Source: Paragordius varius (taxonomy: Eukaryota > Animalia > Nematomorpha). From it: a DNA stretch of 64,000 bases. Shown in pieces: positions 12,131 through 52,922 of the stretch; positions within the stretch are counted from its first letter, which is position 1, and every line of letters begins with the position of its first letter. Location of the stretch: contig OZ176053.1 in NCBI GenBank assembly GCA_964247055.1, forward strand, positions 4,030,001 through 4,094,000, in the 5' to 3' direction. Under the pieces are notes generated by a model. It saw only the letters and a list, made by a program, of their open reading frames with translations. It was not told the origin of the DNA and searched no databases. A program made the translations under genes and the position numbers.

Positions 12131-12215
<85 letters not shown>

Positions 12216-13816: not shown

Positions 13817-16703
13817 TTATAAAATGCGTTGGGCCACTTTAAACCCCCCATAACTCACACAAATTAATATGGTTGATATGAGTGCAATTTTTTTAATTTT
13901 CCGTTTAGTTGATGATTCCACAGGTATTCTGTTTGGATAAAAGAGTATATGAGGAAATAATCAAAATCAGAAAATGCATATTAATTATAACCATATTCTC
14001 GTTTTAAGAAACCTAAATATGTTTAGAAAAATTTACCACTCAATTTTTTGCTTCAGAGTATTGTTTTTAAATTTTAAATTCTTTTTAGTTGCATCAAAAA
14101 AATAATAATTTGTCAAAATTATATTGTATAATGGTAGTATTTTAATAAATTTTATAATTATTATTAAGTAGAAAAAAAATAGTTTTATTCAATATTCTCA
14201 ATATATCATATCCAAAAATATATTGTTATAATGAAAAAAAAGGCATACGTCATAAGCGGTGCGATATCTATGTTATTGGCCCATTGCTTCTCAATTCCAA
14301 TGGTGTGACCCATACCGACTATGCCAACAACCACTTTTGGAATGATCACTTTTATATATAATTTTAAAATAAATGAAAAAAATGTAAATTTTAGATCCAT
14401 TAATTTAATCTTGATTCTGTAACATATGAACAAATTTACCCTTGAACAATTAAAATTCACTCTTGAGCAATTCAAATACACTCTAAAAATAATCATGTGT
14501 TTGGCTGCTAATATAATTCATCAGTATTATGAAATATTTTTTATGGACTAATTTATTATTTTTTAGCATATGTTGATTTTAAACGAAATTTCATTTTTTT
14601 AATTAGTAAAAAAAATATAGGTACTTTTTAATATTCAAAACACATATTTATTTCAGGGTGAATTTGAGCTGGATATGGTATATTTTATAGTCTAAAAAAC
14701 AATAATTAAGTTTTACATAGGATACGCAAAAATTTCACACAAACACCGCGCATAGAAAAAATTATTAGCCACTTATTTAAAAATTAGTGATTTAAAGTTA
14801 TTCAGAAAAAACTGTTTATAAGGAGAATATATGAGCGTAATAATGCTACACAATGTAGATCAATCTTTTTGTTAAATCTATACACGGTGATTATAAGAAG
14901 CGGAGTGCTGTTAGTAGGTAAAAAATATTGATTTTATATGTGGTAATATTTTATATTAGCTTTTATTTATAACTAAACTTTTTACATATGTAATATATCA
15001 AATACTAGGAAGATTTGGTGTGTCAGGATTAGTTGATATTATGATTGGTCGAACGGCCTGTTTTAGTGAATGAGCTAAATAAGCATCTCGTTCATCCACA
15101 AACACTCGTCTGAGTTCGGGATATTCACCAGCCATAGATTCCAAAAATTCTTCCAACATATCTTTTTCCTTGTATTTTTCCACATCCTCTTTGCTAAAAA
15201 AAGGTATATGAGCATAGTTTAAAAACCTAAAACACAGGACCAATTTGTTTTCTAATCAAAAATTTTATAGGAATGTGAACATCAAGATTCATTAAAACTT
15301 TTTATAAAAAAATGAAACCGGAACTCAAAGCAAACAAGTATTACCTGTGCTTTTCAACATTATTATATGGGTAAAAACATTATATTAACGATAAAAATTG
15401 TATTACTTGATAGTTTCTTTGTTGAATAAAAGGCAGCATAAAAATTTAAATTTATTCCAGGCCGACAATGAAGATATAGCCCTTTTAAGTGTAATGTTAA
15501 TTGGTCGATCGCCCATAACCAAGAGACATCCAGGTATTTTTCTGGCCTAAACATATTAAATTACATATCCCAAAAGTATTTAAGAAAATGCCAAATTTTG
15601 CCTCTTACTAAAATATTTTAAACATTGTCTTGTTTATATATTTATATATCTAACATTGAATATATTGATATTACTTAAAAAAATAATTTAACATACTGTG
15701 AAACCGAGTTTAATAATAATTATTAACAAACTAATTAAAATTTTTTGCTCCAAATATTTTAATAATAAAAATATAAATTTATTACTTCCTTGTTGGCTAC
15801 TCTAAACTCTCCACCAGGTGCCATACCTAGCTGCTTAGTTATTTGAGCAGATATAGAAAGTAGCAAAATATGAACAATACCTTGAACAGTTCCATACTAT
15901 ACAGTAAAAAATGTATAGTTAATATAAAAAGCATGATCGTCGTAAAATAACGAAAAAATAATATTAAATTATTGGTTCTTAAATATATATCATAGGCATC
16001 ATCAGGAGACACAGTTAAGAAAATATATAAATACAACACAATAAAAATGACTATGGCGAAAATTTTAACGTTATTTTAGAATAATTTCCACATCGTTTAC
16101 TTTACAAACCATCGTCTTTACCCACTCAATAAAAAGTATAGTTTTTTGATCCTATTTTTTTAGCATAAGGTGCGATTAAACTTGTAAATAATAAAAATCT
16201 ATTTAAGCCTATATCTTATTTTACAACTATAATCATACAGATAATAGAGAAAAAATACGGATCAAAAATATTTATGTCCCTCTGAAAAATGTTTTGGCTA
16301 ACGTTTCTTACGATAAAATTTTAATTTTAACGACTGTTTTTAACTTATAGTAAAGATTGATACAATTTTATACTTGTTTCATTGAATGCTTGATAGATGA
16401 AAGATTAATATTTTGTGCTTCCCGCAATAAAGTTGTTTCATCCAGTTCCATGATGGAAGATCGGCTAGAACAAAGTTCAACTACGACAACATCCGGCTGA
16501 GTTGCATTAATTGTCTTTAAAAATTACATAAAAATATAATTTACATTAATAACATCTTCTTCGCTTGCTTTGCTGAAATGAGCTGTCCCAACTAAATAAA
16601 CAATGCCACCATCATTCGTGGTAAGTTTGGTAACAGTTTTAGGCAATAAAGGATTCGCTAATCTATTTTGGCTTCGAATAATCCATTGTGAATAATCAAA
16701 CAT
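13817..16703 (-). CDS. TRABD: TraB domain-containing protein (pheromone shutdown/TRABD-like), 7 exons, about 316 aa, C-terminal tail anchor
   Basis: Exons (minus): 16703-16545, 16514-16374, 15896-15786, 15546-15407, 15193-15006, 14348-14249, 13928-13817 (951 nt, in frame). Motifs: VYLVGTAHFS, PDVVVVELC, LGMAPGGEFR, GDRPINITLKRA, VDERDAYL, VVVGIVGMGH, and a hydrophobic C-terminus IALISTILICVSYGG. The start codon is uncertain (a possible extra exon starts at ATG 16791). Confidence 0.92.
14397..14678. mobile_element. MITE family A, degenerate copy (TRABD intron)
   Basis: Decayed TTGAACAATTCAAATTCACCC units on the left, AGGGTGAATTTGA...ATGG|TA on the right. The core resembles the other family A copies. 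Confidence 0.65.
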
Positions 16704-16810
16704 AATAGTCAAATATTTAAAAGCTTGTAGTTTTACGATTTTTTTGTCCTTGTTAAAAATTCATTTTTTAGTTAGGTTCTACTATATCCATGTGGTAGTA
16801 GTAAAAAAAT
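16704..16810. promoter_or_regulatory. Putative bidirectional promoter shared by TRABD and MDN1
   Basis: The divergent start codons at 16703 (-) and 16811 (+) are separated by 107 bp. No room exists for two independent promoters unless the 5' UTRs overlap. Confidence 0.6.
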
Positions 16811-17680
16811 ATGCAAGAAAATCAAATTGTATAATTCTTATCATAATTTTTTAGGAAATGAAAAAATTGTTTGGAAATAATAAATTTTTGATTAATTTTT
16901 GCTCGGATGACACGAATTTTTATAGTTGTAACCACGAATCCAAACCTATTGTTATAAATGTTGGTCATCATTTAGAATTTAAGGTAATAATTGTTAAAAT
17001 TCCGTATAGAGCCTGATTGGTGACTATCATTTAACTGATATACCTGGCCAATTTATATGGAAAGCGGGAGATTTATTTGATGTAAATTTTTTTTGATTTT
17101 TAGGCTATAATACAAGGAAAAACCGTCATACTCAAAAACTTGGAAAATGGAAATTTGGATTTTTTACTTTCATTATATGCCCTTATCAAAGAGAAAACAA
17201 TCTATATTACTCCATTTAAAAGAAAATTCGAATTTAATCCTGAATTTCGGTTATCATGCCAAATAAATAGGTTCAATAAATTAAATTTATATATAGTAAA
17301 GACAAAAAATTTTGTTTCTCCTTTTTGAGTCGATCGATGGATTTATCAAAATATTTCTTGGTAAACTTTATGGAACAACCTACCAGATTTGAACTACAAT
17401 CGGTATTTTATTCGCTTATTCATAAACAATATAATATATATGTTAGAAAATTTTGTTTTTTAAATTTATAGTGTATAAAAGGGGTTAGGTTTATAAATTA
17501 TTTCCAAATAGTATGCATTTTCACCGTTTATGAATGCACATGTGACCACCAATAAAAATCCTTTAAACAATATAACATTTACCATATACAAATTTAATTA
17601 ATTTTAATTGATGTTATCTATATTATTAAAGAATATTAACGACGATTTGAACGGTTAACTTCATTTCGTTTGGTTTATAT

Positions 17681-17720
<40 letters not shown>

Positions 17721-20700
17721 ATATATATATTTATATATCTGTTTCTGATTATAAATAAATTTAAAGTGTAATTTAATTTTTATGTAAATACTATTCACAT
17801 TTCTTACAATGAAAATGATGATTGTGTATGGCCAATTATTGCATAATTGGTTATTATTTTTAATTGCCAAAAAAACCAACCCTATATGCCGTGTATTTTA
17901 AGCATTTCGATATCATTGAGGTATGCTAATTCTTGTATATGTGGTCAGCGGTTTCTATTTGTTTTTATAAAAATGTTATTTGTTCTAATCCATTATGGTA
18001 GATTATATCCACATGTATTTTAGCATTCTGCTTTCTGTTTTTTTCAGTCTTGATTTTAGTGATTTTGTGATAAATTTTGCTGTAGTATGTATTTGATTTA
18101 TACGGTTATGTCCATATGTATAAATACATATTTGAGTTGGTTAAATTTTGTCCTGCCCAATTTGATTCTAATAATTATTTACAATTTATATATATTATTT
18201 AGACCTTTATTTTTGTGTCTTTATAGTGGATTCGATACCTCAATTATTGATGTTTATTTAATTTGAATGATATAGTTGATAAGGCTAAACTTGTATTTTT
18301 TTGAACAAAATCATATTATTTAATCTATTTTAACTCCTTAAATTTAATAACTTTACTCAATTTAGATACATTTTAATATTTACTTGTCATATATATACCA
18401 TTTACAATTCAATTTTACCCTTAAATAATTCAAATTCACCCTTGAACAATTCAAATTCACCCTTGAACAATTCGAATTCACCCTCGAACAATTCAAATTC
18501 ACCCTCAAATAAAATATTGTTTTTTAAGATTAAAAATTACCTATATTTTATATATTATTAAAAAATAAAAATTTTGTAAATTAAAATATTACTGAAAAAA
18601 TATTAAACTATACCATAAACATATATTTCATATTAATAATGAGTTATATTAGTTCAAAAACACATAATTTATTTTTAGGGTGAATTTGAATTGTTCAAAG
18701 GTGAATTTGAATTGTTTTGAATTGTTCAAGGGTGAATTTGAATTGTTGGAGGGTAAATTTGAATTGTTTAACGGTGAATTTGAACTGTAAATGGTATATT
18801 ATATAAATTTGGTTGATAGTAGTTTTTACAGTCCCATCAAAATATCTATCCATTTTTCAATTAATTTTTGATCATAGAAATGTGTTAATCAATTCAAATT
18901 TATCAGTCCGCTTCTTTTGGAATGTTGTTTAGATATCTTTTTCCGTGCGATGGAGTTACACTCAACTATAAATACGCAGATCCATCACCAGAGTTATTAT
19001 CAATCATCCAAGTATAATAGACGATTACTTAAAATTAATCAAATTAATAAAATCTATTTTCATCTTAATCCCTTTTAGATATATTAATACAGTAAAATAC
19101 GATGGCAAAACATTTTGTATTATAAATTATTTTTTATGAGAAAACCTTTTTTAATCCTTATAAATAACACATACAAATGCATGTATGAAATATAAAATTA
19201 ATTGTATATTTTGCAACACAGAAGTTTAGATTAAAAAGGTTTAAGCATCTAACAATATGTTATTTCCCATATATAGAATTTTTTTACTTTTTATGGTCTG
19301 TTATAATTTTAATGTTTACTGTAATATTATATTTCACAGGCTGTTGTTTAAATTTTGCCAACGTATTGATATGCAAAATTTCTTTAAAACGAGACACAAT
19401 GGAAACCTTTTGAATCCTAACCCTGAAATTGATAGCATTACCATATTTTTGAATGCATTTGACACGTTTGTCGGACATATTCGATGTAATGATATGCGCC
19501 TACAATGGGCCATAACTTTGGGGGAACGTTTAAATTTGGATAAAGCGACGGTATAGAATAATTTTTACTATACATCAATAAAATATACCATTTAACAATT
19601 TAAACTCTAAAATAAATCGAGTGTTTTTTAGATTAAAAATTATTTATATTTTTTTATATTTTTAAACAATTAAATTTTGTTTAAAATTAAATAATACTGA
19701 AAAAATAATAAACTATGCTATAAAGATATATTTCATATTAATGATGAGTTACATTAGCCCGAAAACATATAATTTATTTTTAGGGTGAATTTGAATTGTC
19801 TGGGGGAGAATTTGAATTGTGATATATAAATCACTTTTTAACTATTAATGATTAATACTAAAATCTTTTCTAAATTATTTTTATGGTATAATGTACTATT
19901 CTTATGATTTATATTGTATATTTAGTTTATGAGTGATTTTTAAAATGTGAAAAGGTTTGATTGTTTTCATTTTATGGTTCAAAATTTCCGGAGGTTAGAC
20001 TATTTTGTTGTAAAAAAAATAATTGATTAAATTTTTTTCGTTTCCCTAAATTACAGTTAGTTATTATTTAGTTAAATATGAATGTATTAACATAACTTTG
20101 TATGCTTCATAAATTTTTACTCAAAATAAATATAACTTTGTGCTACTTAATTAAAACGGCAAATCCATCGCCTGGTTATATATCTATACCATTAATTTTT
20201 TTTTAATATTAACTCGTATATAGGTAGAACGGTTTGTTGTTAGTTATAAACCCGTATTGGTTTGGAAGAAAAATGGTGTAGTCATCGATAATGGTACCGG
20301 AGATGTATCATTCTACCCATATCAATATATGTGCAATTATTTCTTACCTTTTAACGATTTAAATGGCGAAAATAAGGATAATTGTATTAATGTTAATAAC
20401 GAACTTACCTTTTCTGAAAATATGATGGATGTCGATAAGATTGACGACACTTTACCAGAATTAACTGCGGATTTATTAGATCCATCTAGCGATACGAAAC
20501 GCAATAAACGCAAAAAACGTAGAAAAATGGCATCGACGATGACCACAACCAAAAACTTTTGTTTAACGAAACAAGCTTCACAAGTTATCAGGTAAGAATA
20601 TAGTGGGTTTACCTCATTATGAACCCATTTGTATAAGAAAAATACATGCCCTTATCATTAAGCCTCCAAATAATACAATGCAAAATTTATTTTTGTTTTT

Positions 20701-21470
20701 TATGGCGAGCTTAATATTATTTTTACAGATATTAAGGTAAAAATATATAATATTATTACATACCCTTAAATACGTAACTTAACAGTTGTATTTAAAAAAT
20801 AAAACCTCTCCTGAAACCTAATTAATTTCTAATTTTTTATATTAAACAAAAGTTCATTATGAGCGGGGTTAACAAATTAGTTTGCGATATTTATATTTCT
20901 AAAAAATTATTTTATATATTTAGATGTGTACTTACGGCTATAGTCATGAAGGAACCCATTTTATTGGTAGGAGAAACGGGAGTTGGTAAAACTAGTTTGG
21001 TTCAATATCTGCATCAAACTTTTATAAATCACTTTGAAGAACTAAAACATCCCCATAATGATAATACTTTACCGTTAATACAATATAAAAACTCAAAAAA
21101 TTTGCCTGAATTACTGATCATTAATTTAAGCAATCAAACTGAGATTGAAGAACTGTATGGAAGTTATAAACCTAAAACCGTTGTGCAAAGTAAATTATAT
21201 TATAAAAATTTGGATATAAGTTTGCAAATATGGTCAATTATACCTATTAAACCAAAATTGTATATGATAAAATTTTTCAATTTTTTAAAGTTTAATATAA
21301 TTTTAATTAGTTTCAAATGTTATATTTGCCATTTTGTCATTTTTACGTTTATTTTAATAAATCTTTCCATATATAAACATAACAAAACGAATCTTGAATA
21401 ATTTTACAAAATTTTAAATAATTAAAACTTATCGCCCTCATATAGTTTGTGTTTCTTTTTTGAATTTTAG

Positions 21471-21512
<42 letters not shown>

Positions 21513-24500
21513 CATGTTATTGGTATAAAATTTTTATTCAACAACAATATAGGTGATTCAAATGATTATTATATTAAATTGCTGTTGGCACCACATTGTG
21601 TGGAACGGTTTGAGGAGCTCTTTAACATGACTTATTCATCCGATAAAAATCGTGAGTTTTTACGACACTTCCGAAAAATAATTGTGGCTTGTCGGCAAAA
21701 AGGTTAGAATAATCTTATTTATAGACATAAAATATTTTTATCAAAAAATTGGAATCAGTATAGATTTCTTTTAAAATGATTCAATATTTAATTTTATTAA
21801 CCTATACATATATAGAGAAATCGCAAGATATATCACATGACCATAGCAATCAAAATTCGTGGAATAATGCATATGCCATTATGGAATTTGTTGCTCATAA
21901 AGCGATAACACAAGATTCAAAGTCCCAAGGTAAGGGTATATTTTAAAAATGATCCATAATATATGAATATTTTATTTTAAATATCAATTATAACTTAAAA
22001 TTTTGGAAAATTGGAATTTTTATCTTTTATAATTCTGCAAAAAATCTTGTTAAAATCACTTTTTTATACCAATCACAGTTAATATAGCACATTATTAAGA
22101 GTTAAAATTGATTATTTCTTGTGTACCAAACTCTTTTTTAAATATTCAGTATTCTTTCTAAATTTTGTTCATTTTTTCCTCATATTTTTCTGGAGAAAAA
22201 TTCTGTAAATGATTTTTTTTCATTATTAGACGAAACTATTGCTAGTAATAACCCAAAAATTATGGACTCAAATTTGGCAAATGAATGGAAAAGTTTTTAT
22301 TACCGATTAATTCGGATGAAAAATTATATTGACAGCGTGGTGAATGGTCATATTGGTGTGAAAACCGAGCATCTAACCATTTTTGTATATGTTGAGGTAA
22401 ATTTTAAATGCTTATCCTTTGATATATGGGCATTATATTTTTTCTATAATCTCAATCAGATTTGTGTTTATACTACTTTGTTTAAACACTGAATTAACAC
22501 GTTCATAGATTTTCTTATTAATAAAATAAATCTCTCGTCTATTCTAAACCAATATTTTTTGGACAATATCGTAGTTCTAATTTTTAGATATTTTTTTCCT
22601 CATTTAACAAGTTAGCAAGCGTATTAGGTAACTAATATTAGCTATTTATATTTTAATTAACGCTGTTTTTTTCGAGCAGGTAAAAATGGAAAAATATTGT
22701 TTTTAAGTCCAACAGCATGTAAACGAAGTTTTTTTGTCTAAGTTCAACGGTTTAGTATTATTTTTATTAACAATATATAAGCGCATTTTTTAGAATTGTA
22801 AGCCACAAAAAAGCTTATGGATTGATTAAAAATATATTGATAATAATTTATATTTGTAACTGCATACTTATGTTTGAAATGATGCGTCAAATAACTCCCA
22901 AATTATAACACATAAATTTAAATTTTTTTTTCAAAATATTTAACATCAGGTTTAAGTTCAAAAAATTTAAATGTTTTAATTATTCTAGGTTTTATAAAAC
23001 ATGAATGTATTGATACATTGTATATTCTCTACACATTTTAGGGTATTATGATGCGTGCAATGCGAAACGGCGATTGGATTTTATTGGACGAAATCAATTT
23101 AGCTTCGCAGGAAGTTATTGATTTCTTACTCACGCTTTTATATGAAATGACTAAATTTAATACAACAGATGATGGCAGTAATAATTATAATAATGTATCA
23201 TTACAATCAACAAACAACTTTAATAATAAAAATAATATCTTTATACACCCCAATTTTCGGTTATTTGCATGTATGAATCCACCCACAAAATATGAACAAC
23301 AAAAAAATGAATTAGACACTAAAATACGATCAATGTTTACAGAGGTAATATAATAAGGCTCAGTTTTAATATTTTTGGCCAAATATTATGTCAATATATA
23401 TATATATATATATATATATTTAAAAAGGGTTTTTTTTCGCCCAGTTTACAAAAATTTACGCTAATATAATCGTTCGTTCTGGGAGTTTATATTTTAATTT
23501 TATTTTTACGTTTGACAAAGATTACTTGTAGTAATCGAAATATTATATTATAATAAATTATATAATTTTTGCTGATTGATTCCATATATAATAATACTAT
23601 CATTTTTATTTTATAAGTTTGGTACAAAAATTAGAATAATAAATGGCTTCTTCTTTCTTTATCACAAACGAGTTTTCGTCTTTTTAGTTTAATTAACCCA
23701 TATTATGATATACCATTTACAGTTCAAATTTACCCTTGAACAATTCAAATTCACCCTCGAACAATTCAACCCTTGAACAATTCAAATTCACCTTTGAACA
23801 ATTCAAACCTAAAAATAAATTATGTATTTTCGAACTAATATAACTCCTTATTAATATTAAATATATCTTTATGTTATAGATTATTATTTTTTCAGTATTA
23901 TTTTAATTTAAAAATTCTTATTTTTTTAAAAAAATATAAAAATATTGGTAATTTTTAATCTTAAAAAACATATATTTTATTTGAGGGTGAATTTGAATAG
24001 TTCGAGGGTGAATTTGAATTGTTTAAGGGTGAATTTGAATTGTTCAAGGGTGAATTTGAATTGTTTAAGGGTGAAATTGAATTGTAAATGGTATATATAT
24101 TAAACACCTTTTTACAAATGCAATTAAACAAAAAATATAAATATTATGGTTATAACAAATTATTTTATGTAATTACACCTTTTTCAATTCCATTAGTCAT
24201 TATGTTATAAACCTAAGAATTTCAGGATCATCTGTAAAAGTTTTTAACAATAATTATGTGCATAATTGGATTGAGCTTGAGGTTTTATGCATTTCATGCA
24301 TTTATTTTTTAATCTTTTAAGAAATAAAATATGAATAATTAAAGGTGAGAAATATATGTGACATTTTTGGAATCACTTATCTTTAAATACTATAGAAATA
24401 ACATAATTATTAATTTATTTGATTTTATGTTTTACCTAGATATATATTCCTGAAATTGAAGATCGTAATGATTTGAGGCTCATTGTCAATTCTTACTTGA

Positions 24501-27500
24501 AAAAGGGTAAGATTTATTATAAATCACTTAAAAATGTCAATAGACTCACATTATTTATTTTTAATATTTGAATAAAATTTTATTTAAAATAGAATCCGAT
24601 ACCACAAATCATGTACCCAATAACATAATTGAAAATATAATTTCGTTTTATTTGCACACTCGTCGACAAACTTTTGCTAATATGTTTGAGGGGCAAAAAG
24701 TTACCCAAAAATCTGGAATTAGTGATTCTTTATATGAACACAGTCCTGTTTATAGCTTGCGATCTTTGTGCCGTGCTTTGCAATTAATTGGCTCATCTAA
24801 TTATTTTAATATGGCCGATCAAAATTTAAATTCTGCGTCACAAATAAAGAAGGCTAAATCTAGTCTGTATAAACGGATTTATACTGTAAGTGTTTTTTTT
24901 TGTTTTAAATTTATAATAATAAATAATATAATATAGTTTTTGACTTTTTTAGCGAAAAATAAATCTATATTCATATTTAATTACAAAATCTTTTAAAGCA
25001 TTAATATAAAATAGAAAACGAGAATTTATGTATCATGATGTTTGTTTTATAATATATAAATTATCAATATTTGTTTATATGAGATTAATATTATTTACGT
25101 TTTTTTGCGCATAGGCCTTTCTGACTATTTTCTCATCTGAATTGGCGATTGATCATCATAAAATGTTGCACAACTTAATCCTTAGACAAATATTTGACGG
25201 TTGTCAAGATCAGGACATAGCTAGTTTTTGCAAACCAAAATGCATAAATATTGAAAATATTTTATCGCCCTCAAAAATGATATCTACTAATAACGCTTCA
25301 AGTAAAAATATATTCAATATTGGAGTTTTAATTTAACATTGGAGTTGAATTTTTTATTTATGCAAACCATCCTTAATTTTATAAAATATATATTATAACT
25401 TATGATATATTTGGCTAATGAATTTTCAATTAATATTTAGTTTTTAATATTTTACAATATTTGATATATATCTACGGATATAATTTACAAAATTGAAAGC
25501 ATAAAATAATATTATATATTTTTGATCGCCACTGTGAGTGTTCCAAAATATTCATAAACAAGTAAATTTAGGTGAAGGTATCGCTAACCTATAACGATTC
25601 TACAAAAAGGATAAAATTGATTGATGATCAACATAAGCAAATTAGCTTATAGGTGCAATTTTTTGAAAAGCCTTATTGTTAATGTAAGATTTACATCATA
25701 CATTAAAAATATTTTTTTTGTAGAATATGTTTGGATTGGAGAATACCCTTTGTTAAAGGGTGATGACTCTACGCAAAAATTTGATGACAGTTTTGTATTC
25801 ACATCATCCGTAACGCACTACCTAATGTCAATCGCACGGATTTTGCAATATCAGTATTCTCTTTTTGAAATTAATATTATTGTTTAAGATATTAATGTTT
25901 TTATATATTAAAATAATAAATATTTAATTAATATGTTTTTTTGGGGGTGATGCTATCAAATTTATTTCTTAATCAATTTTGTTAATTAACACAATTTTCT
26001 ATTCTTGGGCAAGAGATCTTTGCGTTATTTCGCAATATCAAATTTATATTTATAAAAGTGATGTTTTTTGGAATATGATTGTTTTTTTTTAATTATTTAA
26101 AAAATATTGATTTAATATATTTTATATTTTTTAATTTATTTCTCAAATGAATATATTTTTTAATTTATTTCTCAAATGAATTTTGTTTGAATTTTCGTTA
26201 GGCGTTTTCCTATTCTTTTGCAAGGGCCAACTTCGGTGGGCAAAACATCACTGATACAATGGCTAGCAAAATATTTATGTATTCCGTGTACACGAATTAA
26301 CAATCACGATTATACAGAAATATCGGATTACATTGGCAAATATCAGTATGATGCGGCGACGGAAAAATTTTATTTTCAACCAGGTTGGTTACATGTTTTA
26401 TTTTGTACTGGAAACAATTTTGATTTGTTTATAGAGGTCTTGTCTTTTTGACACAATTATAATAATTTGGATATGATTGTTTTGAATATTTAATAATTGG
26501 CATTTATTAATACTATTAATAGTAGGGATTTATTACCGCAAATGTAGCTATATGTTGTAAATATTTAATATAATTCATGGACAATTCATTTTTTTTTCAA
26601 AAAAATTTATATTTCAATCACATAAAACTTAGTATATATACCATTTTTTAAGTTAAACATTAGTTATAAATTTTAACTGATTTTTTTTTTAAAAATTACG
26701 GAGTTATAACGGGTCAAATTAAGTTTAAATTTATCAAAAATATATTATCTTTTAAAACCGAAATATTTATCTCGCATTTTTAAATAAAGGTCCATTGATT
26801 TACGCCATGTGTCATGGTCATTGGATAATTTTGGATGAATTAAATTTGGCACCCAGTGAAGTGCTGGAAGCACTGAATAGAGTTTTAGATGATAATCGCG
26901 AACTTAATCTGTCAGAATTTGCAGAATTTTTTGGTGAAAATGATGTGCACAACAAATTATTAACTCATAACGGAATGTTAAAGGGTATATATTTATAATA
27001 TGTTTGATATTGTTTTTATATAAAATATATAAGATTTCTTGATATTTAATGAAAATAAACAAAGTAAAAAAATATTATAAAGTGATCCAAATGATTTGTC
27101 ATTAGTATTCACAAAAGCTTTGTGTTTACTAGCCTTAATCAGTACGAAACACTATTTGTTTTAAAGTTTTCACACATCAACTTTGTATATACCTCGAATC
27201 TTTTAATTAGGTATAAATACAGCTATTACTAGGTAAAATTTAATAATATTGAAAAAAAAGTATTTTTACCATATATTGAATATATTTAATTTTTATTTTT
27301 TCAATATTTCTATAGCTCATCCACGTTTTACATTGTTTGCTACGCAAAACCCTCATGGTTCCTTATATTCTGGGCGCAAAGTATTAAGTCGCGCTTTTCG
27401 TAATCGTTTTATCCAAATCAATTTTTCATCCTTGCCCTACGATGAAATTAAAGTACAATTTCGTTTAAAATTTTATTATTATGGAATAAATTTTAAAAGT

Positions 27501-29609
27501 TAAATCTGAAAAATTGATATTTTACTTAGATAATAATACAAGTAATTTTAGTATTTTTATAGGGTTTATATATGAAAATGATAGTTTCTCATATTTATAT
27601 AATTCTAAGTTCACTAATTCTAGGAAATTTTTGTTCAATTTTTTATTGTAGGTAATATTGCGTAAAGGATGGCATTTATCGCACCAAGCCAGTGAAAAAA
27701 TGGTGAAAGTTATGATGGAATTACAGTCAACCCCTTCACGCTCATGTTTGTTTTGGGGTCGTGAAGGATTTTTAACCATTAGGTTTTTGCTTTCTTTTTT
27801 TACCAAAACATTTATTTTTATTTTAAATCATAGTTGCTTTTTCTATTGTTTAATATTTTTAGTTTTATTAAATTACAGACTTTCCATAATTTATAATATT
27901 TTGGATTATAAAAATCCGATAAATAGTTAAAAGCATCCGTATGTTAAGTTTACTTCTTCCATAACTTTAATACATTGGAGGCTAAACATAAGGGTTTATA
28001 ATTGTATATTTTAATATTTTATAAAATATGGGTATGAGAGCCAATACATTTGGGCAAATTTATTTTAACTATTAAATTCACCGTAATATAAAAAATAAAT
28101 TATAGTTTCCTTGTAAATTATAATAAAATATTTTTTATTTATGTTAAAAATATGCCATTTTTATATTTAGGGATATATTTAAATGGGCGCATCGCTTTAA
28201 TGTTTTGAGTTCAATTAAAAAGTCATCTATGAATGAAATTGTCAATGAATTGATTACAGTTTTACAACACGAATGGGGACATGATATTTTAGCTTACACA
28301 GGTTTTTTATCCTATTAAATTTGAACTCGTTTCAGTTTTGTTTAAAAAATATAAAATTCTATTCTTATTTTATATAGGTTACACACTTATTGCACCAAGA
28401 TGCCGTACTTCGGAAGATTTGAAAATAGTTCATGATATATTTTATAAAACATTTTTTGGTCATGTTTTGAAACGAAACATTAATATAAACCATACTAATG
28501 AAATTCTACAATTAGAGGAAAATCTTTGCAAAAAAGATTCCCATATATTTACATGGGCCCTTAAGTTATGTGAAAGTAGAAAGGAGTTTCGGACATATTT
28601 AAAACATATATATTGGAGTTATGAAACACGAAGAATGTTTTTACTTACGCTTGTCGGATTGATTTTCAATGAATCCATTTTGTTGGTCGGACCCACAGGG
28701 TAAATCTATATACAGGAAAAGATAAAAATATAAGATATTAAAAAGACTAATAATATTTTTTATAAAGGCAACCAACCATATTTTATTTATCCTTATATAA
28801 TGTTTTGGGTTTGCAATATTTTGTTATAAGTTTATATTAACAATTAAGGGTTCAAGACTATTGTTTTTTTATATTACGCTTTGTGTTTATAATATTTATC
28901 TTTCCTCTTTTTTTTTTAAAAATCCTATTTACCTAAAACATTCCTATACTAATTTTAATTCTTTTTCCTCACGTTTCAATGTAATTTTAGATGTGGTAAA
29001 ACTACAGTTGCTCAAATACTTTCCTGTTTGTTTGACCAAATTATGTATACAATTAATTGCCATCAACAAACGGATTCATCCGATTTTATTGGCTCTCTGA
29101 AACCATTTGCTAACAACGAAAATAATATTATTAATATTCCTGATGATAAAAATGGTAACTTATATTTATATTAAATTTTATTTTATTTATATTTTAACCT
29201 TTAGTACATACTATATTAGTTTATTTGTTTCAGTATCTTGGTCCAATTAAACACATACGAAATTCTTTTTAATCAATTTTCTTGGAATCATCCCATAAAC
29301 AAAATTTTTTATTAATATATACCATTTACACTTTAAATTCACCCTTGAACAACTCAAATTTACCCTCAAACAATTCAAATTCACCCTAAAAATAAATTTT
29401 GTGCAGGTTAACATGACTCATCATTAATATAATTTATTTCTTTATTGCATAGGCTATGATTTTTTTCAGTATTTTGTTAATATTAAACGATTTTTCATTT
29501 TTTTGAAATATAAAATAGAGGTCGTCTTTGATAATCAAGATACACCTAATTTAATTTAGGATTTGTTCGAGGGTGTTGAATTGTTCAAGAATAAATTCGA
29601 CTGTAAATG

Positions 29610-29646
<37 letters not shown>

Positions 29647-32600
29647 ATAAGTTATATCCATAACTATTATAATAACTCTTTATTATATAACAACGATAGA
29701 CGATGTCAAACCAATGTTTAAATGGTGTGATGGTCAATTAGTACAGGCTATGAAAAATGGTAAAACACTTTATATCATTTTATTATATATTTTGCAAAAA
29801 TGTAATGTAAAAATTGATCGATAAAATCATAAAACAATCCCACAATACTTATGCTATGTTTTTAGGTGATATGTTATTGTTGGATGAAATATCTCTGGCA
29901 GATAATTCAGTTCTGGAACGATTAAATAGCGTTTTAGAAAAAGATCGCAAATTATCGATTGTAGAGAAAGGACTTGCAGAACATTCCCACAATGTTTCAA
30001 ATAATGGGATAGAAATAACTGCTCATCCATATTTTCATTTGATTGCAACTATGAATCCGGGCGGTGATCATGGGAAAAAAGAGGTTTTTTACTTTTTTGT
30101 AGCTCTATTTTATGTTCGCTAAAGATATTTTGGATATTAATTTTGCCTATTGGGGTTATTCTGACCTCTTTTTATCATAAAAGCAAAACTGGTTAGTATG
30201 GATAAGGTTTAGATCAGGTCTGATTGCTAACATATAAAAAAATTAAATTATGTTAAGTAAGCCATGTCTCTATTAGAATGACAAGAGGTAAAAAATCATG
30301 TATAATATTTACATACTAGCGTAAATCTCGTGCTGCTACGCAGCCCGAGGACGTCCTTCGGACTTCTGGGGGCAGCTTTTTGAAAAAAAGCACAATAAAA
30401 TGATCCACATATGTGGATTATTTCACATTATATAATAGCTATGATCTCATAGGAATTTCAAAACGGGGCATCATACTAATATATAGTTTACTTGGGCGAA
30501 AAATAGATTCAAAAAATTATTTTTATGGACTTTTTTTTGAAAAAATGGCATTTTACGGAGTGACCGGGCAAAAAGAGTGCCTAAATTAAAAAAGCGAGAC
30601 GACTATGTTTGGCTCAATCGCAAATAACTAAACAAAAATATTTGAAACTGAATGGTCCGACACGTTATCCTGAAAATTGTCTCAAAGACACGATTTTTGT
30701 GGACTTCTGTTTTCAAAAAAAGCCCGTTTCACGGGGTGGGCCCGAACTGGGGCCTAATTTAAAAAAGGGCGAAGCTATTGTCTGGGCATTCATTGATTAT
30801 ATTTTTTCGACATTTGCATTTGAATGCGTCTACCGGTTTTCCGGAAACAGATCACAAAGCCAGCATTTTCCATTTTTATAAATATATAGATGAAAAAAAT
30901 AGATTTTAGCTAAATCCCCAATAATTCATTGAAACCAAGTTATATATTTACGATAATATCATGACCCCATGCAAGTATCACAGTCCGTTAAAAGAATGTT
31001 AATTAAAAAATATCTAACGTATACTAAGTAGTTTTAACATAATATTGATACTTATATCCTATCTTTAAAACATAATAATGAAGAAAAAATTGAATTAATA
31101 GTTTTTTTTAGATTATGACTATGTCATTAAAATAGCCTGCAAAACTTTTATTTATAATATTCATAACTACTTTAGCTTTCACCAGCCATTCGAAATAGAT
31201 TTACGGAGATATGGTGTTCTCACGAACAAATTTTTAGCGTTCAAGACTCGTGTCCACAGCCAGATTTTGTCGGTTTCATTGTTCACAATTTGAGAGATTA
31301 CAGTAACTCATTGATAATGAAGCCTGAGCTTTTATTACAATCTATAGCAAAGGCTTATTACCATTTCTTGCATCAACTTGATCAAACAATAAATATGAGG
31401 TTTCTTACGAATATTTTAAAAATTATATTTATCTGGGCATTATTAAGTTTTTCTAAATGAAAAAACGGGAAATTTTGTTCTAAGTATTTGGCCTGATTTT
31501 AACCTCTGTTTTTTAGATGACACAGAATCATAATTTTAAATTCATTTTTTATAATCACATATATCCATTATAAAAAATATTATATTTCAGATGTCTGATA
31601 TTATTCGTCCCAATTTTTTTTGTAATTAGGTATGATTTAACTACTCGAGACATCTTAACCTTAGTCAAATACGTTCAATTGTGTATGGAACAATGCATCT
31701 CTAATGATAAAAACAATAACGATTCTATTAACTCTTCTCCAATATGTGTTGAATATGATAATCTTTTTACAAAATATTCCATCAATACTTACAAGTTTGA
31801 AATGAAACAAATCGTTACTATTCTCTGGGCTTTTTATGATAGCATAAATCTTGCCATTATAAATAAATTGGAAATTATGGGTATATGTTTAGGATTTTAA
31901 TATCTCATTTTATGTAATTTTTATGTTAATACCATGCTTTTTCCTAGGTTTTCTAAACCATTTAAGTACCGACAATATTGAGAAGATGGTAGCAAATGCC
32001 CACAAAATTTTACAAAAATCACTTATTACTCTATGCGATAATATTCTTAAACAAATTTCTGTCACCAATATCAATGTAATTGAATCATTTATCGATAGCC
32101 GTTACCAGGAAGCAATGGTCCATCTTTATGAACGAAACGCTAATAGATTTGGAATATCCCCATATTTTATAAATTATATTGGTATTTATATATCAGAAAT
32201 ATTTTAATATTACATTTTTGCACTTATTTAACAAACAACACATATTTTTGGAAATCTGTGCTATTTTTCATTAATATATTTATTTATATAGATGGAAGCC
32301 GTAATTTGACCCATACAAATTATGTGTTTAATGTTCCAACCACACTCGAAAACATTTATAAAGTTCTTCAGGCATTAACATTATGCAAACCCATACTGTT
32401 AGAAGGTAGGTAAATATGAAGGAGTTATATAGCAATTTTTTATATATTTTAGCGTATAAATGCTATGCATTATCGATTTTTAAATTTAAAATGTCGTTTG
32501 TATACCATTTTTTACGCCTAAATTTTTGTTATGATTTTCGTAGGTTCCCCTGGAGTCGGTAAAACATCTCTAATACAAGCATTGGCATCACTTACAAACA

Positions 32601-35600
32601 ATCATTTAATCCGGATAAATTTATCCGAAAATACTGTATTTTTTTGTTATGAAATATATTGTATTCTCGTTATATTGTAAAAACAATATGGGAGTAAAAT
32701 GATCGTTTACATTGATATGTTAAAATTAGCAATACAAAAATCACATATTTTAGCATGATATGATTATTAATGTGAAACTTATATCCTACCATTTATACTG
32801 ATTACACATTGCCTATTGATACATTACTCAATTATTATATATGCAAGTGCTTTATTTTTATTTTATTAAATTATATTAAGGATGTTTCAGACCTTTTCGG
32901 CTCAAATTTACCCAGCGAAGATGGCACTTTTAAATGGTATGATGGTCCTTTTTTGAAGGCAATCAAGGATAAACACTGGATTCTTATCGATGAGGTTTAA
33001 AATTAATTTTGATGTGCAATCATCTCTAGAAAAAAACATGGATCTTTATATGCAAAAATAGTGCCCTTAAAAATATAGATACAATTAAATTTTAATTAAA
33101 TATTAAATGTCTGAATAAGAATAATAATAATGGTCAAATTTTTATTTATCATATTTTGTTTATTGGGAGAGTTAGAATACTAACAAACTAGTAAATTTTT
33201 GACGATCGAGGGGTCATTTGTATGTTTATCAATGTTAATATTATATTTTCCCAATTAATTTATGTTTTTTACGCTGAAATTGAATAAGGATAAATCTTGG
33301 TTTAAGTTCTTGTAATGCATACTAAATTATTTCATTATTATGGTATAGCTAAATCTAGCCTCTCAACCCGTTTTGGAAGCCATTAATTCAGTTTTAGATC
33401 ACAGAGGCATTTTAAACATACCAGAGTTGGGGAATAAGCAATTCCCATTAGACAAAGAGAAAACGTTTATTTTTGGATGTCAAAATCCGCATCACCAAGG
33501 CGGTAATCGAAAAATGCTTCCAAAATCTTTCCTTAATCGTTTCATACATGTAATTATTAGCTTTCATATTTACCTTTTTCGAAGACCCTTTTTTTGCTAA
33601 AATATAATCATATAATAATTACTTTAAAATATTTTAAATATTTTTAGCGAAAATTATAACTTAACAATGACATATACTAATTTTGGTTAAAATATAATGT
33701 TTGTTAATCATTACGTTTTTTTTATTTTTTATAAATTAATCTTACGCAAGAGCCGATATATCCATTTTAAATTTTTGTATAAATATGATTATCGAATTTT
33801 TCATTTATTCTTTAGGTATATGTACATGAATTAACCAAGGTGGATTATATAGCAGTACTTCAACACAACTATCCTATGTTATCTCTACAACTTATTAAGT
33901 TTATGGTTGAAATGAATTTCAAGGTATATATATCATATGATGAGTTTTCGTTAAAAATTCGGTTCTAATATGTTTAATTTATTTTGTATGTCATAGGTCA
34001 AAGAATATTTGGCACAAGAAAAAACCCACGTTCATAAATGGGAATTTAATATACGTGATATAATGCGATGGGCATCCTTGATTGATGTTGTAATATTTTT
34101 TTCTATAATTTGTTTTTTTCTAATTTTAGTTTTATCCATGTTTAAGTTAAATAAAAAAAATTTCTATTATACATATTAACAGTATTTGACTTTACATAAT
34201 ACTTTTTGAAATCCAAACAGCTTAATATTTGACTTTGTGTTTAAACCTACATAAATAGTATTCTATAATAATGTAAATTTTTTTGTAGGATCCCAATTAT
34301 ACCTGCATTTCCAACATATACAACGGCTTTGAATTAATATACCTTGCACGACTAGATAATGCGGATTCACAAACTTATCTACAAAGCTTATTTTACCACC
34401 AAATTCATACATTAAATTCTTCAACAATGAATGGCCAAATTGATAAAATGTTACTCCTAAATAATGGTCATATCTCGGTGCCTTTCACTTTTACATATTT
34501 ATTGAGGCCTGAAAACCAAATGGTTTTACAGTTAGGAAGCGCATTTCTACCTGTTGAATCTGATGATAGCACCTTGAATATTTCTGATATTCAAAATTTT
34601 CAACAAAATATTTTGGAAAGCGGAAAAGAAATAATTCTTACATTAATACCCGGTCAGATGAAGGCACTTGAATGGTGTGCACAAATTTTAGCTCATAATT
34701 GGATGCCTATTTTGGTAATTTTATTATAATAGAATATAAAATAAAATTTATGATTAATGTCATTGTTTTATAAAATAACCAACAAGTAAGACTATAAAGA
34801 TACAAATAATGGTTACACCTGACTTTAATATTCAAAAAATTGTCAGTTTTAATATTCTATTGTTTTATTATTTGGTTGAAAAATATTATATTTGAAGTTA
34901 CATTTTATTGGTTTTGTTGTAAATGACTGTATTCATAAGCGGTTAGACTGGTATTTTTGAGCGTTTAAAAACTTGGTCTTATACCATATTTTAATCATAA
35001 GTCTCATTTTCCAATTTTAAAATATTCTATAGTTTATTAATAATAAAAAATTATTTTTTTAGGTGGGAGATAGCAGCACAGGGAAAAAAAGTTTAGTTGA
35101 ATTGTTGGCCAATATGACTAAAAACAATCTTGTCACCATATCTCTTACTCCAAGCTCGGACACTACTGATTTAATTGGGCATTACACACAGGTAATGATT
35201 GATAAAATTATAAAATCGTGTACAATAAGGAAAAAATCTTCAAAAATTGTAGGCTAATTTCCCCCTTATTGGAAAACAAACTTTTAATAGATTTATTTCT
35301 AATTATAAAATATACAAAGATTATTTTGGCTATAATTATATATATTAACTTGCTTGACTGATTGATTTGAGTTACTATCATAAAAATTTTTACATTTTAA
35401 AACTATCTATATGAAATAATATTGTTTGTATCCCCATATGATAAATTTTATAGTTTATAATTTTGTTTATTTAGGAAGATCATTTGAAAGTTTTAAGCGA
35501 TATCATTATCGGGTTACAAAGTATATTAGGTATAATCAAAAGTAACAAAACACCCAATATTACGCAAGATTGCCTGCTTAAAATTGACAAACATCAAAAA

Positions 35601-37498
35601 TCGCTTGAATATTTTTTCCTACAAAGTATTATTACAATGTTTTAAAATAAAATTTTAGTCTTGAAAGATTTCAAAGAATATTCCAATGATTATACCTGCA
35701 TTCAAATTGTTTTTGAATGGTTAAACACTATCGAATTTAACACTAACAAAGATGAAATTGGCGATAAAATAAATTGTTTAAAAAATAAATTTTTGTCAAT
35801 CCAACAATCCTTTTTGGAACCAGCCAATACTAATTTATCTCACGAACAAAATGATGCGGTCAACAAAAAACATCAAATCAATTTTGTGTGGGAAAATAGT
35901 TTATTTCTTCAAGCCCTTGAGCGTGGTGATTGGATACTTATCGAAAATGCCAATCTTTGCAAGTATTTAATAGTATTTTTTTATTAAAAATTATACTTGT
36001 GAAAATGATTATTACCATATATATTTGATAACAAACAATCTGTTTTATATATATATATAGTTAGGTTTTAAATCTTTTACAAAAAATTTTATTGCTTTAT
36101 AATTATAAATATTTAGAAATATCTATAAATATGTGTATAGCAATTGCCAATAAATAAATCATAACAAAGAACAAAACAAAACAGAGTTAAAATAAAATGT
36201 TATTAAATTTTCTTGTTGTTAATTAGTGCATCTGTTTTGGATCGCATTATGCCACTGTTTGAATCATTAGAAGCTAACACATTAGAGGTACCAGAACGAG
36301 GCCTTGTGAAATCTGATACATCTTACAATGTTTTTACCGTTAAAAAACACCCAAATACACGGTAAAATTATATTAAACTCATTGAAAGTTTACATTGATA
36401 TTATAGAATCTTATACTCCAGTGTATAAATGGAATGAATATTAATAGTCAAAAGAAAAATGTTAAAATAAATTTACCAAACACATATTTATTTTGTTGTC
36501 AATAACCATTATTTTATTATATATGCAATTATAATTCAGCAAAAATTGTATAAATTTATTATAATATTTCGATTACTACAAGTAATCTTTGTCAAACGTA
36601 AAAAATAAAATTAAAATATAAACTAATTTTATTTTCATTTAATGACAGAATCATACTATCCCTTAATCTTCGTAATGGACCCCTTTCCCGAGCCATGTAT
36701 AATAGAGGAATTGAAATTAATTTGGACAATTTTGCATTGGTATATTTTATTACATACAACATGTAAAAAAACTACTTAATAATAATTGATCTAGTTTTTT
36801 AAATTAAAATTTATATATTTATAGACAAGAGAAGATTTTTTGCAAATATGTTATGGATATAAGCTACCTAAACATACCATTGATATTATTATTGCTATTT
36901 TTGAGCATGTGTGCCAAATAAATACTCCAATTATCCCAGGTATCCATACTAATAATTTTGTCATTTTCATCTTTTTATGCATAAAACTTAAATATTTTTT
37001 AATTATGCTGTTTTTCATTAATAACTACTATATTTTTTATTATGAATTTTCTGAAAAATGTTGTTTTTGAATAAAAAATTTATTTATACGTAAAAGTGTT
37101 GTTTATGGATTCTTTTTTTTAAATAAAATATTTATAAATAAATTAATTTTCCTTATAAAAAAAGTTTTTATCTTTGATTAAAACCCATTTGAAAAAGTAT
37201 ATTTATCTATAAAATTATCATTCTAATTTATAGAGAATCAATATAGCTACTCTGATATGATTCCCATAGTTAAATGTTTACACCCTATAAAAAAAATCTC
37301 TGTGGAAGAAATTATTCAAATTTTTAAACACCAAATGAAATTTTCCATCGATGTAATTTTATCATCTTTACTTATGTTACCTCATTTTAAAATTGATTTT
37401 AATAAAATTATTTATTTTAATTTTTCTAGTTTATAAAAATTACGGTTTTTGAAATGAATCCAAATAAAACTTAATTTTAATCAAGTATTATTAATACT

Positions 37499-37529
<31 letters not shown>

Positions 37530-49500: not shown

Positions 49501-50447
49501 GAAAAGGTATGATTATTTATTATGTCTACTATATTTTATTTCAACATTTAAATGTACCGACTATGGGTATACATGGTTTAATATACGTATCATGAGGTTT
49601 TTTTTACTAAAAAACACTAACTTTTTGTTTTTAATTTTTTTTTCTAACACTTAGAATATAAGATAATTATGAATTATCATTTAATATTTTTGGCTCATTA
49701 TGATAATTTAAAATATTAAACTAGAAATTCAACAGGAATGCTTAAATTTACAGTGGTTAATTAGATATGTAAAAGGCGTATGATAATGAGTTTAAAAGGG
49801 GTGATTGTTTGTAGGTTTAAATGAGTGGAATGGACTTATGTTCATTATTAGATTTTTTATTTAATATTTGAAAATAAATTATATATATATATATATATAT
49901 ACTGTACTGGCCTTAGGGTTATTGCAATCGTTTAAAATCAAACGATAAACCAAACGAAAGTCAACAACAATCATACCCCTCTAAAAAACAAACGGATGAT
50001 TTTGATTCAAATAATAATGGTGACGATAATGATGATATTGGATGTGGAATGGGTGAGGGAACAGGCCTTAAAAATGTTAGCGATAAAATGGAAAATTTGG
50101 ATCAAGTAAGATAACTGTACCAACAATGTAAAATTTAGTGTATGTATAATAAGCTTAAATATTTTGAACCATAGAATTTTAAATATGTGGCAAATTTCAG
50201 CTTTTTATTATTCATTGTGGTCGCATTTCTATCATATATTTTAAAATATAATTGTTAGTTCAACCAATACATCAAACGAAATTTAATTCAAAATATATAC
50301 ATTTATAGATTGAAAGCTGTGCTCCAATGGATGATGAAAGTTTTAAAGAAACCAAATCCCAAGAAAAAGGAAAATCACAGACAAAAGATGAACAAACGAT
50401 CGAATTACCCGATGAAGATTTTGCGGGTTTTTACATAATATTATATT

Positions 50448-50491
<44 letters not shown>

Positions 50492-52873: not shown

Positions 52874-52922
<49 letters not shown>

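What the first reader, a model, noticed from the sequence alone, without database searches (positions are those of the whole stretch)
16811..17402. Midasin appears to lack its whole N-domain and the Walker A motif of AAA1
Seen: the earliest MDN1-like sequence is PIVINVGHHLEFKSLIGDYHLTDIPGQFIWKAGDLFDAIIQG, which aligns with the middle of AAA1. Only ~37 residues lie upstream (MQENQIEMKKLFGNNKFLINFCSDDTNFYSCNHESK), with no GxxGxGK[TS]. Walker B reads TVILKNLE. TRABD starts 107 bp upstream on the opposite strand, leaving no room for more exons. Known: human and yeast midasin have an N-terminal domain of roughly 300 aa and a P-loop in AAA1. Inference: this is a naturally N-truncated ribosome-maturation motor in which D1 is purely structural.
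Basis: partly seen in the sequence, partly recalled or inferred. Interest (0 to 1): 0.7.

Follow-up and report, generated by a model that had tools for sequence, protein, structure and literature searches.

The report
Midasin gene without recognisable N-domain
This AT-rich animal's gene for midasin, the giant motor that matures the large ribosomal subunit, seems to start inside its first motor module with the ATP-binding loop gone and no N-terminal domain found, but no RNA data could confirm the start.

Summary
The sequence facts are confirmed. A complete MDN1 gene runs on the + strand from about 16811 to 56260. It is collinear with the midasin of the horsehair worm Gordionus, by far its closest relative in the libraries, from residue 88 to 5638 of 5641.

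- **AAA1:** the first recognisable sequence is strand beta-2 of AAA1 (KPIVINVG). About 35 unalignable residues lie upstream.
- **Motifs:** there is no GK[ST] for AAA1 anywhere in the 64 kb. Walker B reads VILKNLE. AAA2 to AAA5 keep canonical motifs, and the lid, linker and MIDAS parts are present.
- **Upstream:** TRABD starts 107 nt away on the other strand. Independent short-read contigs bridge that junction.
- **Start:** the proposed start is an 18-nt exon plus a 26-nt intron. This fits the genome: RPS4 in the same window starts with ATG plus a 27-nt intron.

"AAA1 is only structural" is well supported and fits published S. pombe genetics. "The N-domain is absent" is likely, about 0.6, but not shown:
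- The candidate RNA runs hold nothing here.
- My N-domain profile detects only 1–11% of exon-sized pieces even in ordinary midasins.
- Gordionus models also lack the N-domain, but truncated models at that boundary are a known annotation artefact.

This is a new variant of a known protein, of moderate interest. The scan had not noted it before on other DNA.

The parts
16527..16703 (-). TRABD first coding exon; its ATG is at 16703-16701
   Evidence: ORF listing. Weak Pfam TraB_PrgY_gumN hits on this exon and on 15001-15255. Further TRABD exons show coding-like codon use at 16371-16523, 15762-15896, 15406-15546, 15001-15255 and 14209-14330.
16704..16810 (.). 107-nt spacer between the divergent TRABD and MDN1 start codons; presumed bidirectional promoter
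   Evidence: Sequence. An in-frame TAA at 16802-16804 closes the MDN1 frame upstream of the ATG. A run X1 contig covers 16371-16840 with no differences.
16811..16828 (+). Proposed first coding exon of MDN1 (MQENQI)
   Evidence: ATG in frame with the next exon through a 26-nt GT..AG intron. RPS4 in this window has the same architecture. No RNA support was obtainable.
16829..16854 (+). 26-nt micro-intron
   Evidence: GT..AG with a T-rich tract before the AG. Same size class as the three following introns.
16855..16983 (+). Exon 2. Its first ~25 codons sit where P-loop and helix 1 would be but align to nothing. Its last ~16 codons are AAA1 strand beta-2.
   Evidence: Frame closed upstream by TAG at 16852-54. 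Sub-profile alignment of NHESKPIVINVGHHLE, 1.3 bits, 40 of 2000 shuffles as good. No Pfam or PDB hit alone. A possible internal acceptor lies near 16929/30.
17010..17081 (+). Exon 3: AAA1 helix-2 insert region (SLIGDY..IPGQFIWKAGDL)
   Evidence: 59% identical to Gordionus residues 88-109. Profile positions 336-356, E 2.4e-4.
17104..17270 (+). Exon 4: degenerate Walker B (VILKNLE), helix 3 and the sensor-1 strand of AAA1
   Evidence: 36% identical to Gordionus residues 112-166, joint E 1.7e-10 with exon 3. Profile positions 360-409.
17297..17402 (+). Exon 5: end of the AAA1 large subdomain
   Evidence: Reading frame and GT donor at 17403. Its position corresponds to Gordionus residues ~176-200 by eye; there is no significant score.
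18878..19011 (+). Exon 6: first part of the AAA1 lid
   Evidence: Weak tblastn match to Gordionus residues 205-258, E 0.47. Splice sites read.
19340..19550 (+). Exon 7: AAA1 lid
   Evidence: Profile positions 498-566, E 2.7e-7. Pfam AAA_lid_7 at 19.1 bits, E 0.0016, below the cut-off. Gordionus residues 223-316, E 7e-7.
20224..20591 (+). Exon 8: AAA1-AAA2 connection with a low-complexity K/R-rich insert
   Evidence: Codon-use score 27. Weak match to Gordionus residues 320-424. An in-frame 3-nt haplotype deletion lies at 20534.
20924..21189 (+). Exon 9: AAA2 P-loop (GETGVGKT)
   Evidence: Pfam AAA_5. Gordionus residues 412-507, E 1.4e-19.
21190..56260 (+). Rest of MDN1: AAA2 to AAA6, linker, D/E-rich region and MIDAS domain
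   Evidence: Collinear HSPs to Gordionus P0151 up to residue 5638 of 5641. Pfam AAA_5 on AAA2 to AAA6 exons, and AAA_lid_5 at 30 bits, above its cut-off. The MIDAS exon 53896-54081 is 66% identical.

Best explanation
This is the functional MDN1/Rea1 orthologue of a nematomorph-like animal, in an N-terminally reduced form.

- **Start (inferred).** Translation starts at 16811, or at the ATG at 16858, next to a 107-nt promoter region shared with TRABD.
- **Missing part (inferred).** The protein lacks the usual ~260-300-residue N-terminal domain and the helix and strand that precede the AAA1 P-loop.
- **AAA1 (shown).** AAA1 cannot bind or hydrolyse ATP in the canonical way, because it has no GK[ST] and its Walker B is K-N. 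Its beta-2 to beta-5 core and lid are nevertheless kept.
- **Role of AAA1 (inferred).** It serves as a passive spacer that closes the six-module ring.
- **Engine (motifs shown, role inferred).** AAA2 to AAA5 have intact Walker A and B motifs and would supply the ATP-driven work. The linker and C-terminal MIDAS domain would pull assembly factors off pre-60S particles as in yeast.
- **Ring-linker junction (inferred).** It must be held without the N-domain scaffold.
For: 1. **Exon chain.** The chain from 16811 on is open, with four 22-26-nt GT..AG introns.
2. **Closed frames.** The frame is closed by TAA at 16802 and TAG at 16852, so more N-terminal sequence needs a distant exon.
3. **Assembly.** TRABD starts 107 nt upstream on the other strand, and short-read contigs at 16371-16840 and 16811-17054 bridge the junction.
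4. **Local precedent.** RPS4 in this window starts with ATG plus a 27-nt intron.
5. **No sixth P-loop.** None is found in 64 kb, whereas even the degenerate AAA6 loop is detected at E 1e-3.
6. **AAA1 still conserved.** Its core is conserved with Gordionus, E 1.7e-10.
7. **Gene complete.** It runs through to the MIDAS domain.
8. **Closest relative.** Gordionus scores 1900 summed bits against 1055 for the next protein. Its longer model starts only ~45 residues before its AAA1 P-loop and aligns to the N-domain+AAA1 profile from position 265 on.
9. **Published genetics.** PMC6920918 reports that AAA1 ATP binding and hydrolysis are dispensable in S. pombe.
10. **Length.** The AAA2 P-loop lies about 415 residues from the start, against about 640 in 50 full-length midasins.
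Against: - **No transcript data.** The two candidate RNA runs hold nothing of 15500-21499.
- **Low search power.** The N-domain profile finds 6 of 555 pieces of 25 aa and 38 of 337 pieces of 40 aa from ordinary held-out midasins. Its silence therefore says little.
- **Weak coding signal.** My codon-use score barely sees even the known AAA1 exons, at 3-7 units.
- **Odd fold.** A central beta-1 strand is missing or non-hydrophobic (ENQIEMKKLF), which is awkward for an AAA fold and hints at a missing exon.
- **Artefact risk in the relative.** Many public models start at this same boundary, including an old Limulus model whose newer version has the N-domain. The Gordionus parallel may be such an artefact.
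- **Possible internal acceptor.** One near 16930 could make the first 25 codons of exon 2 intronic.
Confidence: 0.6

Rival explanations
1. The gene model is incomplete. Further 5' exons encode beta-1 and a highly diverged N-domain. They lie inside TRABD introns, in the 725-nt gap at 13505-14230, or further upstream, and splice to the acceptor at 16855 or ~16930.
For: - The acceptor at 16854/55 is strong, and a second good acceptor lies near 16930.
- The beta-1 strand is missing from the present model.
- N-domain exons would escape my profile and my codon score.
- Truncated models at this boundary are common artefacts, as the Limulus pair P0142 and P0152 shows.
Against: - No plus-strand candidate exon scores above noise between 13505 and 16810, apart from antisense shadows of TRABD exons.
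- No P-loop exon is found within 16.8 kb upstream.
- The ATG, 26-nt intron and in-frame join would arise by chance about 5% of the time, by my estimate.
- The neighbourhood is gene-dense, and an antisense-nested 5' end would be unusual.
- Neither Gordionus model, one from RefSeq and one filed under a separate GenBank accession, has an N-domain.
Confidence: 0.25
2. The AAA1 exons at 16811-17270 are decaying pseudo-exons or 5' UTR. Translation starts further down, for example at the Met in exon 5 (MDLSKYF), which matches the start of the Gordionus RefSeq model. The ring would then have only an AAA1 lid plus AAA2 to AAA6.
For: - The RefSeq Gordionus model P0001 starts at the equivalent position.
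- Codon-use scores of exons 2-4 are low.
Against: - About 160 codons in a 25% GC sequence stay open across four in-frame micro-introns.
- Exons 3-4 remain 36-59% identical to Gordionus, E 1.7e-10. That implies purifying selection in both lineages.
Confidence: 0.08
3. The N-domain survives as a separate gene elsewhere in the genome and joins the ring in trans.
For: None directly. The N-domain is described as a discrete scaffold at the AAA1/AAA6/linker junction (PMC6920918), so a split is conceivable.
Against: - No N-domain-like piece is found in this window.
- I came across no such split midasin in the searches made here.
- This cannot be tested without the whole genome.
Confidence: 0.07

Closest known systems
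Midasin-like protein of Gordionus sp. m RMFG-2023 (Nematomorpha), CAK9295482.1 (5641 aa) and XP_065315247.1 (5465 aa)
   Same: - By far the closest relative: 33 collinear HSPs, 1900 summed bits, about 49% identity over 1947 residues.
- Shares derived AAA1 features (IPGQF, IYI.P.K..FNP.FRL) and a non-canonical Walker B.
- Both of its models lack an N-domain.
   Different: - Gordionus keeps an AAA1 Walker A (GSSSSGKS), about 45 residues before it (helix 0 and strand beta-1), and the Walker B aspartate (LVLDGLE).
- The window has none of these.
Canonical Rea1/Mdn1/MDN1 (S. cerevisiae, S. pombe, human; cryo-EM structures of 2018 as reviewed in PMC6920918)
   Same: - Six AAA modules, midasin lid domains, a long linker, a D/E-rich region and a MIDAS domain.
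- AAA2 to AAA5 have intact Walker A and B motifs.
- AAA6 is degenerate.
   Different: - Canonical proteins have an N-domain of roughly 260-300 residues.
- GK[ST] is present in AAA1 of essentially all ~140 representatives surveyed.
- Here neither is found.
Dynein heavy chain, with degenerate AAA5 and AAA6 (analogy from general knowledge, not tested here)
   Same: A single-chain AAA ring in which some modules have lost nucleotide motifs and act as structural spacers while others drive the motor.
   Different: A different protein family. In dynein the degenerate modules are the last ones, not the first.

Membership tests
Midasin (MDN1/Rea1) | Six tandem dynein-type AAA (AAA_5) modules in one chain | tested here: met
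   Pfam AAA_5 hits on exons of AAA2, AAA3, AAA4, AAA5 and AAA6. The AAA1 core exons match Gordionus AAA1 at E 1.7e-10 and the AAA1 profile.
Midasin (MDN1/Rea1) | Midasin-specific AAA lid domains | tested here: met
   PF17865 AAA_lid_5 at 30 bits, above its 22.7 cut-off, on 24565-24933. PF17867 AAA_lid_7 at 19.1 bits, below its cut-off, on the AAA1 lid exon.
Midasin (MDN1/Rea1) | Long linker, D/E-rich region and C-terminal MIDAS domain, collinear with orthologues | tested here: met
   HSPs are collinear with Gordionus up to residue 5638 of 5641. The MIDAS exon 53896-54081 is 66% identical and holds DDSHS. Pfam VWA was not detected on single exons.
Midasin (MDN1/Rea1) | Walker A and B intact in AAA2 to AAA5 | tested here: met
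   Walker A reads GETGVGKT, GPTSVGKT, GPTG|CGKT and GSPGVGKT. Walker B reads LLDEIN, ILDELN, LLDEIS and LIDEV.
Midasin (MDN1/Rea1) | N-terminal domain of ~260-300 residues before AAA1 (typical of the family, not needed for orthology) | tested here: inconclusive
   No hit to profile positions 1-260 at E<0.1 anywhere in the window, and none upstream of 16855. The test detects only 1-11% of exon-sized N-domain pieces. Pfam has no model for this domain.
Midasin (MDN1/Rea1) | Walker A (GK[ST]) in AAA1 (near-universal, not needed for orthology) | tested here: not met
   No such motif in exons 1-2, and no sixth P-loop in 64 kb. It is present in essentially all surveyed representatives.

The most novel reading that the evidence does not exclude
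Nematomorph-lineage midasins, both this animal's and Gordionus', really work without the N-terminal scaffold domain, and this one also without any nucleotide site in AAA1. That would be a natural minimal ring, showing that the N-domain and AAA1-bound nucleotide are dispensable for pre-60S remodelling and that the ring-linker junction can be held in another way.
Probability: 0.5. Interest if true: 0.5.

Novelty: new variant of a known kind. Interest (0 to 1): 0.4.

Why it matters
Midasin is essential and among the largest proteins of eukaryotic cells. Structural work describes its N-domain as the scaffold that ties AAA1, AAA6 and the linker base together, and the papers I searched report no test of it by deletion.

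A natural orthologue without this domain, and with an AAA1 that has lost its otherwise near-universal GK[ST], would define a minimal working architecture. It would give structural biologists a ready-made deletion variant to express and image.

It also extends to a core ribosome-biogenesis factor the picture of gene and domain reduction reported for horsehair-worm genomes. The AAA1 motif loss on its own is not very surprising, because S. pombe tolerates AAA1 Walker mutations.

Tried and rejected
- **PDB sequence search** with exon 2 and exon 4 alone found no Rea1/Mdn1 hit; the exons are too short and diverged.
- **Pfam** on exons 2, 3, 4 and 6 found nothing.
- **N-domain profile.** I built an N-domain+AAA1 profile from 50 full-length midasins and searched all six-frame ORF pieces. 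There was no N-domain hit, but the control shows too little power to count as absence.
- **Codon-use scan** of 13400-21300 found no convincing plus-strand exon upstream. It also scores the real AAA1 exons poorly. GC profile.
- **'Degenerate P-loop' idea.** My reading of KLFGNNKF as GxxGxGKT is not statistically supported; only spacing and length fit. I keep it as a possibility only.
- **RNA evidence.** The runs labelled as possible RNA of this species hold none of the region.
- **Other relatives.** A word-index search with the Gordionus AAA1 region found no other nematomorph midasin. A metagenome scan found nothing.
- **RNA genes.** Rfam and tRNA scans of the window found none.

Full report
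**What the window is.** It is 25% GC throughout and carries animal genes:
- an M13 peptidase on the + strand, ending at 13505;
- TRABD on the minus strand, about 14230-16703;
- a very large midasin gene on the + strand;
- RPS4 on the minus strand.

Earlier notes of this scan describe 22-27-nt micro-introns in this genome. I saw the same here in MDN1 and in RPS4.

| Feature | Coordinates | Note |
|---|---|---|
| Exon 1 | 16811-16828 | starts with ATG |
| Intron | 16829-16854 | 26 nt |
| Exon 2 | 16855-16983 | |
| Intron | 16984-17009 | 26 nt |
| Exon 3 | 17010-17081 | |
| Intron | 17082-17103 | 22 nt |
| Exon 4 | 17104-17270 | Walker B position reads VILKNLE |
| Intron | 17271-17296 | 26 nt |
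| Exon 5 | 17297-17402 | |

- All four introns are GT..AG.
- The frame is closed upstream by TAA at 16802 and by TAG at 16852.
- TRABD's ATG is at 16703-16701, so 107 nt separate the two start codons.
- I extended the model through the AAA1 lid to the AAA2 P-loop:

| Exon | Coordinates | Content |
|---|---|---|
| Exon 6 | 18878-19011 | AAA1 lid |
| Exon 7 | 19340-19550 | AAA1 lid |
| Exon 8 | 20224-20591 | connection to AAA2 |
| Exon 9 | from 20924 | AAA2 P-loop, GETGVGKT |

**Is it really AAA1?**
- Single exons are too short for PDB or Pfam searches.
- I therefore fetched 150 midasin representatives using an AAA2 exon as query. From 50 full-length ones I built a 658-position profile covering the N-domain, AAA1 and the AAA2 start.
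- Against all 3521 six-frame ORF pieces of the window:
  - exon 3 hits profile positions 336-356, E 2.4e-4;
  - exon 4 hits 360-409, weakly;
  - exon 7 hits the AAA1 lid at 498-566, E 2.7e-7.
- The best library hit is the midasin of Gordionus sp. m RMFG-2023, a horsehair worm.
- Its longer model (P0151) matches exons 3 and 4 at a joint E of 1.7e-10.
- It is collinear with the window from residue 88 to 5638 of 5641.
- Its summed score is 1900 bits, against 1055 for the next protein, from Limulus. The window's animal is therefore a nematomorph or a close relative.
- In exon 2 only the last ~16 residues align, to strand beta-2: 1.3 bits, with 40 of 2000 shuffles as good.
- The first 25 residues of exon 2 plus exon 1 align to nothing.
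- Their length, 49 residues to the exon 2/3 boundary against 48 in Gordionus counted from beta-1, fits a degenerate beta-1, P-loop and helix 1. I could not support that reading statistically.

**The AAA1 nucleotide site is gone.**
- A motif scan of all six frames finds plausible P-loops only for AAA2, AAA3 and AAA5.
- AAA4's P-loop is split by an intron, and AAA6 reads GKK.
- The profile search detects the five P-loop exons of AAA2 to AAA6, even the degenerate AAA6 one at E 1e-3, and no sixth.
- An intact AAA1 P-loop exon would therefore have to lie more than 16.8 kb upstream, beyond at least two other genes.
- In a survey of the representatives, GK[ST] of AAA1 is kept in essentially all.
- Walker B of AAA1 varies widely, with readings such as KD, LN, DG and TN.
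- It also states that only AAA2 to AAA5 must bind or hydrolyse ATP for growth.
- The loss of the Walker A motif is thus unusual among sequences but compatible with known function.

**The N-domain question.**
- In 50 full-length midasins the first P-loop lies near residue 300 and the second near 640. Here the AAA2 P-loop is about 415 residues from the proposed start, despite a low-complexity insert in exon 8.
- No ORF piece in the window hits profile positions 1-260 at E<0.1, and none lies upstream of 16855.
- This says little. When I cut the N-domains of 45 held-out midasins into exon-sized pieces, only 6 of 555 pieces of 25 aa and 38 of 337 pieces of 40 aa were detected. This lineage is also much more diverged than those.
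- Pfam has no N-domain family.
- A codon-use score and a GC profile show nothing convincing on the + strand between 13505 and 16810, apart from antisense shadows of TRABD exons. The same score is weak on the real AAA1 exons.

*Arguments for a true start at 16811:*
- the closed frames;
- the in-frame ATG followed by a micro-intron of the genome's typical size, which I estimate arises by chance about 5% of the time;
- the head-to-head TRABD gene;
- RPS4, whose universally conserved N-terminus here requires ATG plus a 27-nt intron. An earlier, unchecked note reports a similar start for LIG4;
- short-read contigs at 16371-16840 and 16811-17054 that bridge the junction without a difference, so it is not a misassembly.

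*The Gordionus parallel:*
- Its longer model starts ~45 residues before its AAA1 P-loop (GSSSSGKS) and aligns to my profile only from position 265. Its RefSeq model starts later still.
- This is suggestive only. Many public models begin at exactly this boundary, including an old Limulus model whose newer version has the N-domain.
- No other nematomorph midasin is in the libraries.

*Argument against:* the model leaves AAA1 without a hydrophobic beta-1 strand, which is structurally awkward.

**Transcripts.** The only candidate RNA runs of this species label hold nothing of 15500-21499. The decisive test could not be made.

**Verdict.**
- The gene is a complete, apparently functional midasin.
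- AAA1 has lost its nucleotide motifs but is still conserved as a structural module. This is shown.
- It most likely lacks the N-terminal domain, which is inferred, at about 0.6.
- The rivals are:
  - unseen upstream exons, 0.25;
  - a downstream start that leaves the AAA1 exons untranslated, 0.08;
  - an N-domain encoded elsewhere, 0.07.
- It is a new variant of a known protein, of moderate interest.

Noticed in passing
window 18389-18800 and 19580-19830; also 14380-14680, 23720-24140, 29250-29420: Introns of MDN1 and TRABD carry a very abundant repeat built of ~21-nt tandem units (GGTGAATTTGAATTGTTCAA-like), in both orientations. In run X1 its contig word depth is ~10^5-10^6 against ~10^2 for flanking DNA, and many contigs join one copy to another.
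   Followed up: partly
window 60886-60917, minus strand: The first coding exon of RPS4 is the ATG alone. It is followed by a 27-nt GT..AG intron and then [10 protein letters not shown], a clean example of a minimal first exon with a micro-intron.
   Followed up: yes
window 28690-28995: The Walker A motif of AAA4 is split by an intron of roughly 290 nt between GPTG and CGKT.
   Followed up: no
window 20534 and 20984-21062: Run X1 shows a second haplotype at about half depth. It has an in-frame 3-nt deletion in the K/R-rich insert of exon 8 and a cluster of base changes in the AAA2 P-loop exon. It also has a 2-nt insertion inside the 26-nt intron at 17277.
   Followed up: no
window 13780-13940: A GC-richer island (0.32-0.37 against ~0.2 around it) lies between the convergent 3' ends of the M13 peptidase gene and TRABD. 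It has no Rfam or tRNA hit and no convincing ORF.
   Followed up: partly
library proteins P0013, P0044, P0065, P0125, P0127, P0135, P0142, P0149, P0151: Many public midasin models from unrelated organisms begin within a few residues of the N-domain/AAA1 boundary (profile positions 241-277). At least one, the old Limulus model, is an annotation artefact. Some, for example a protist of Eukaryota sp. TZLM1-RC (P0128), might be truly N-domain-less.
   Followed up: partly
window 12100-12250, 17680-17730, 21460-21520: Long (TA)n / (TATATA)n microsatellites lie in intergenic and intronic DNA.
   Followed up: no
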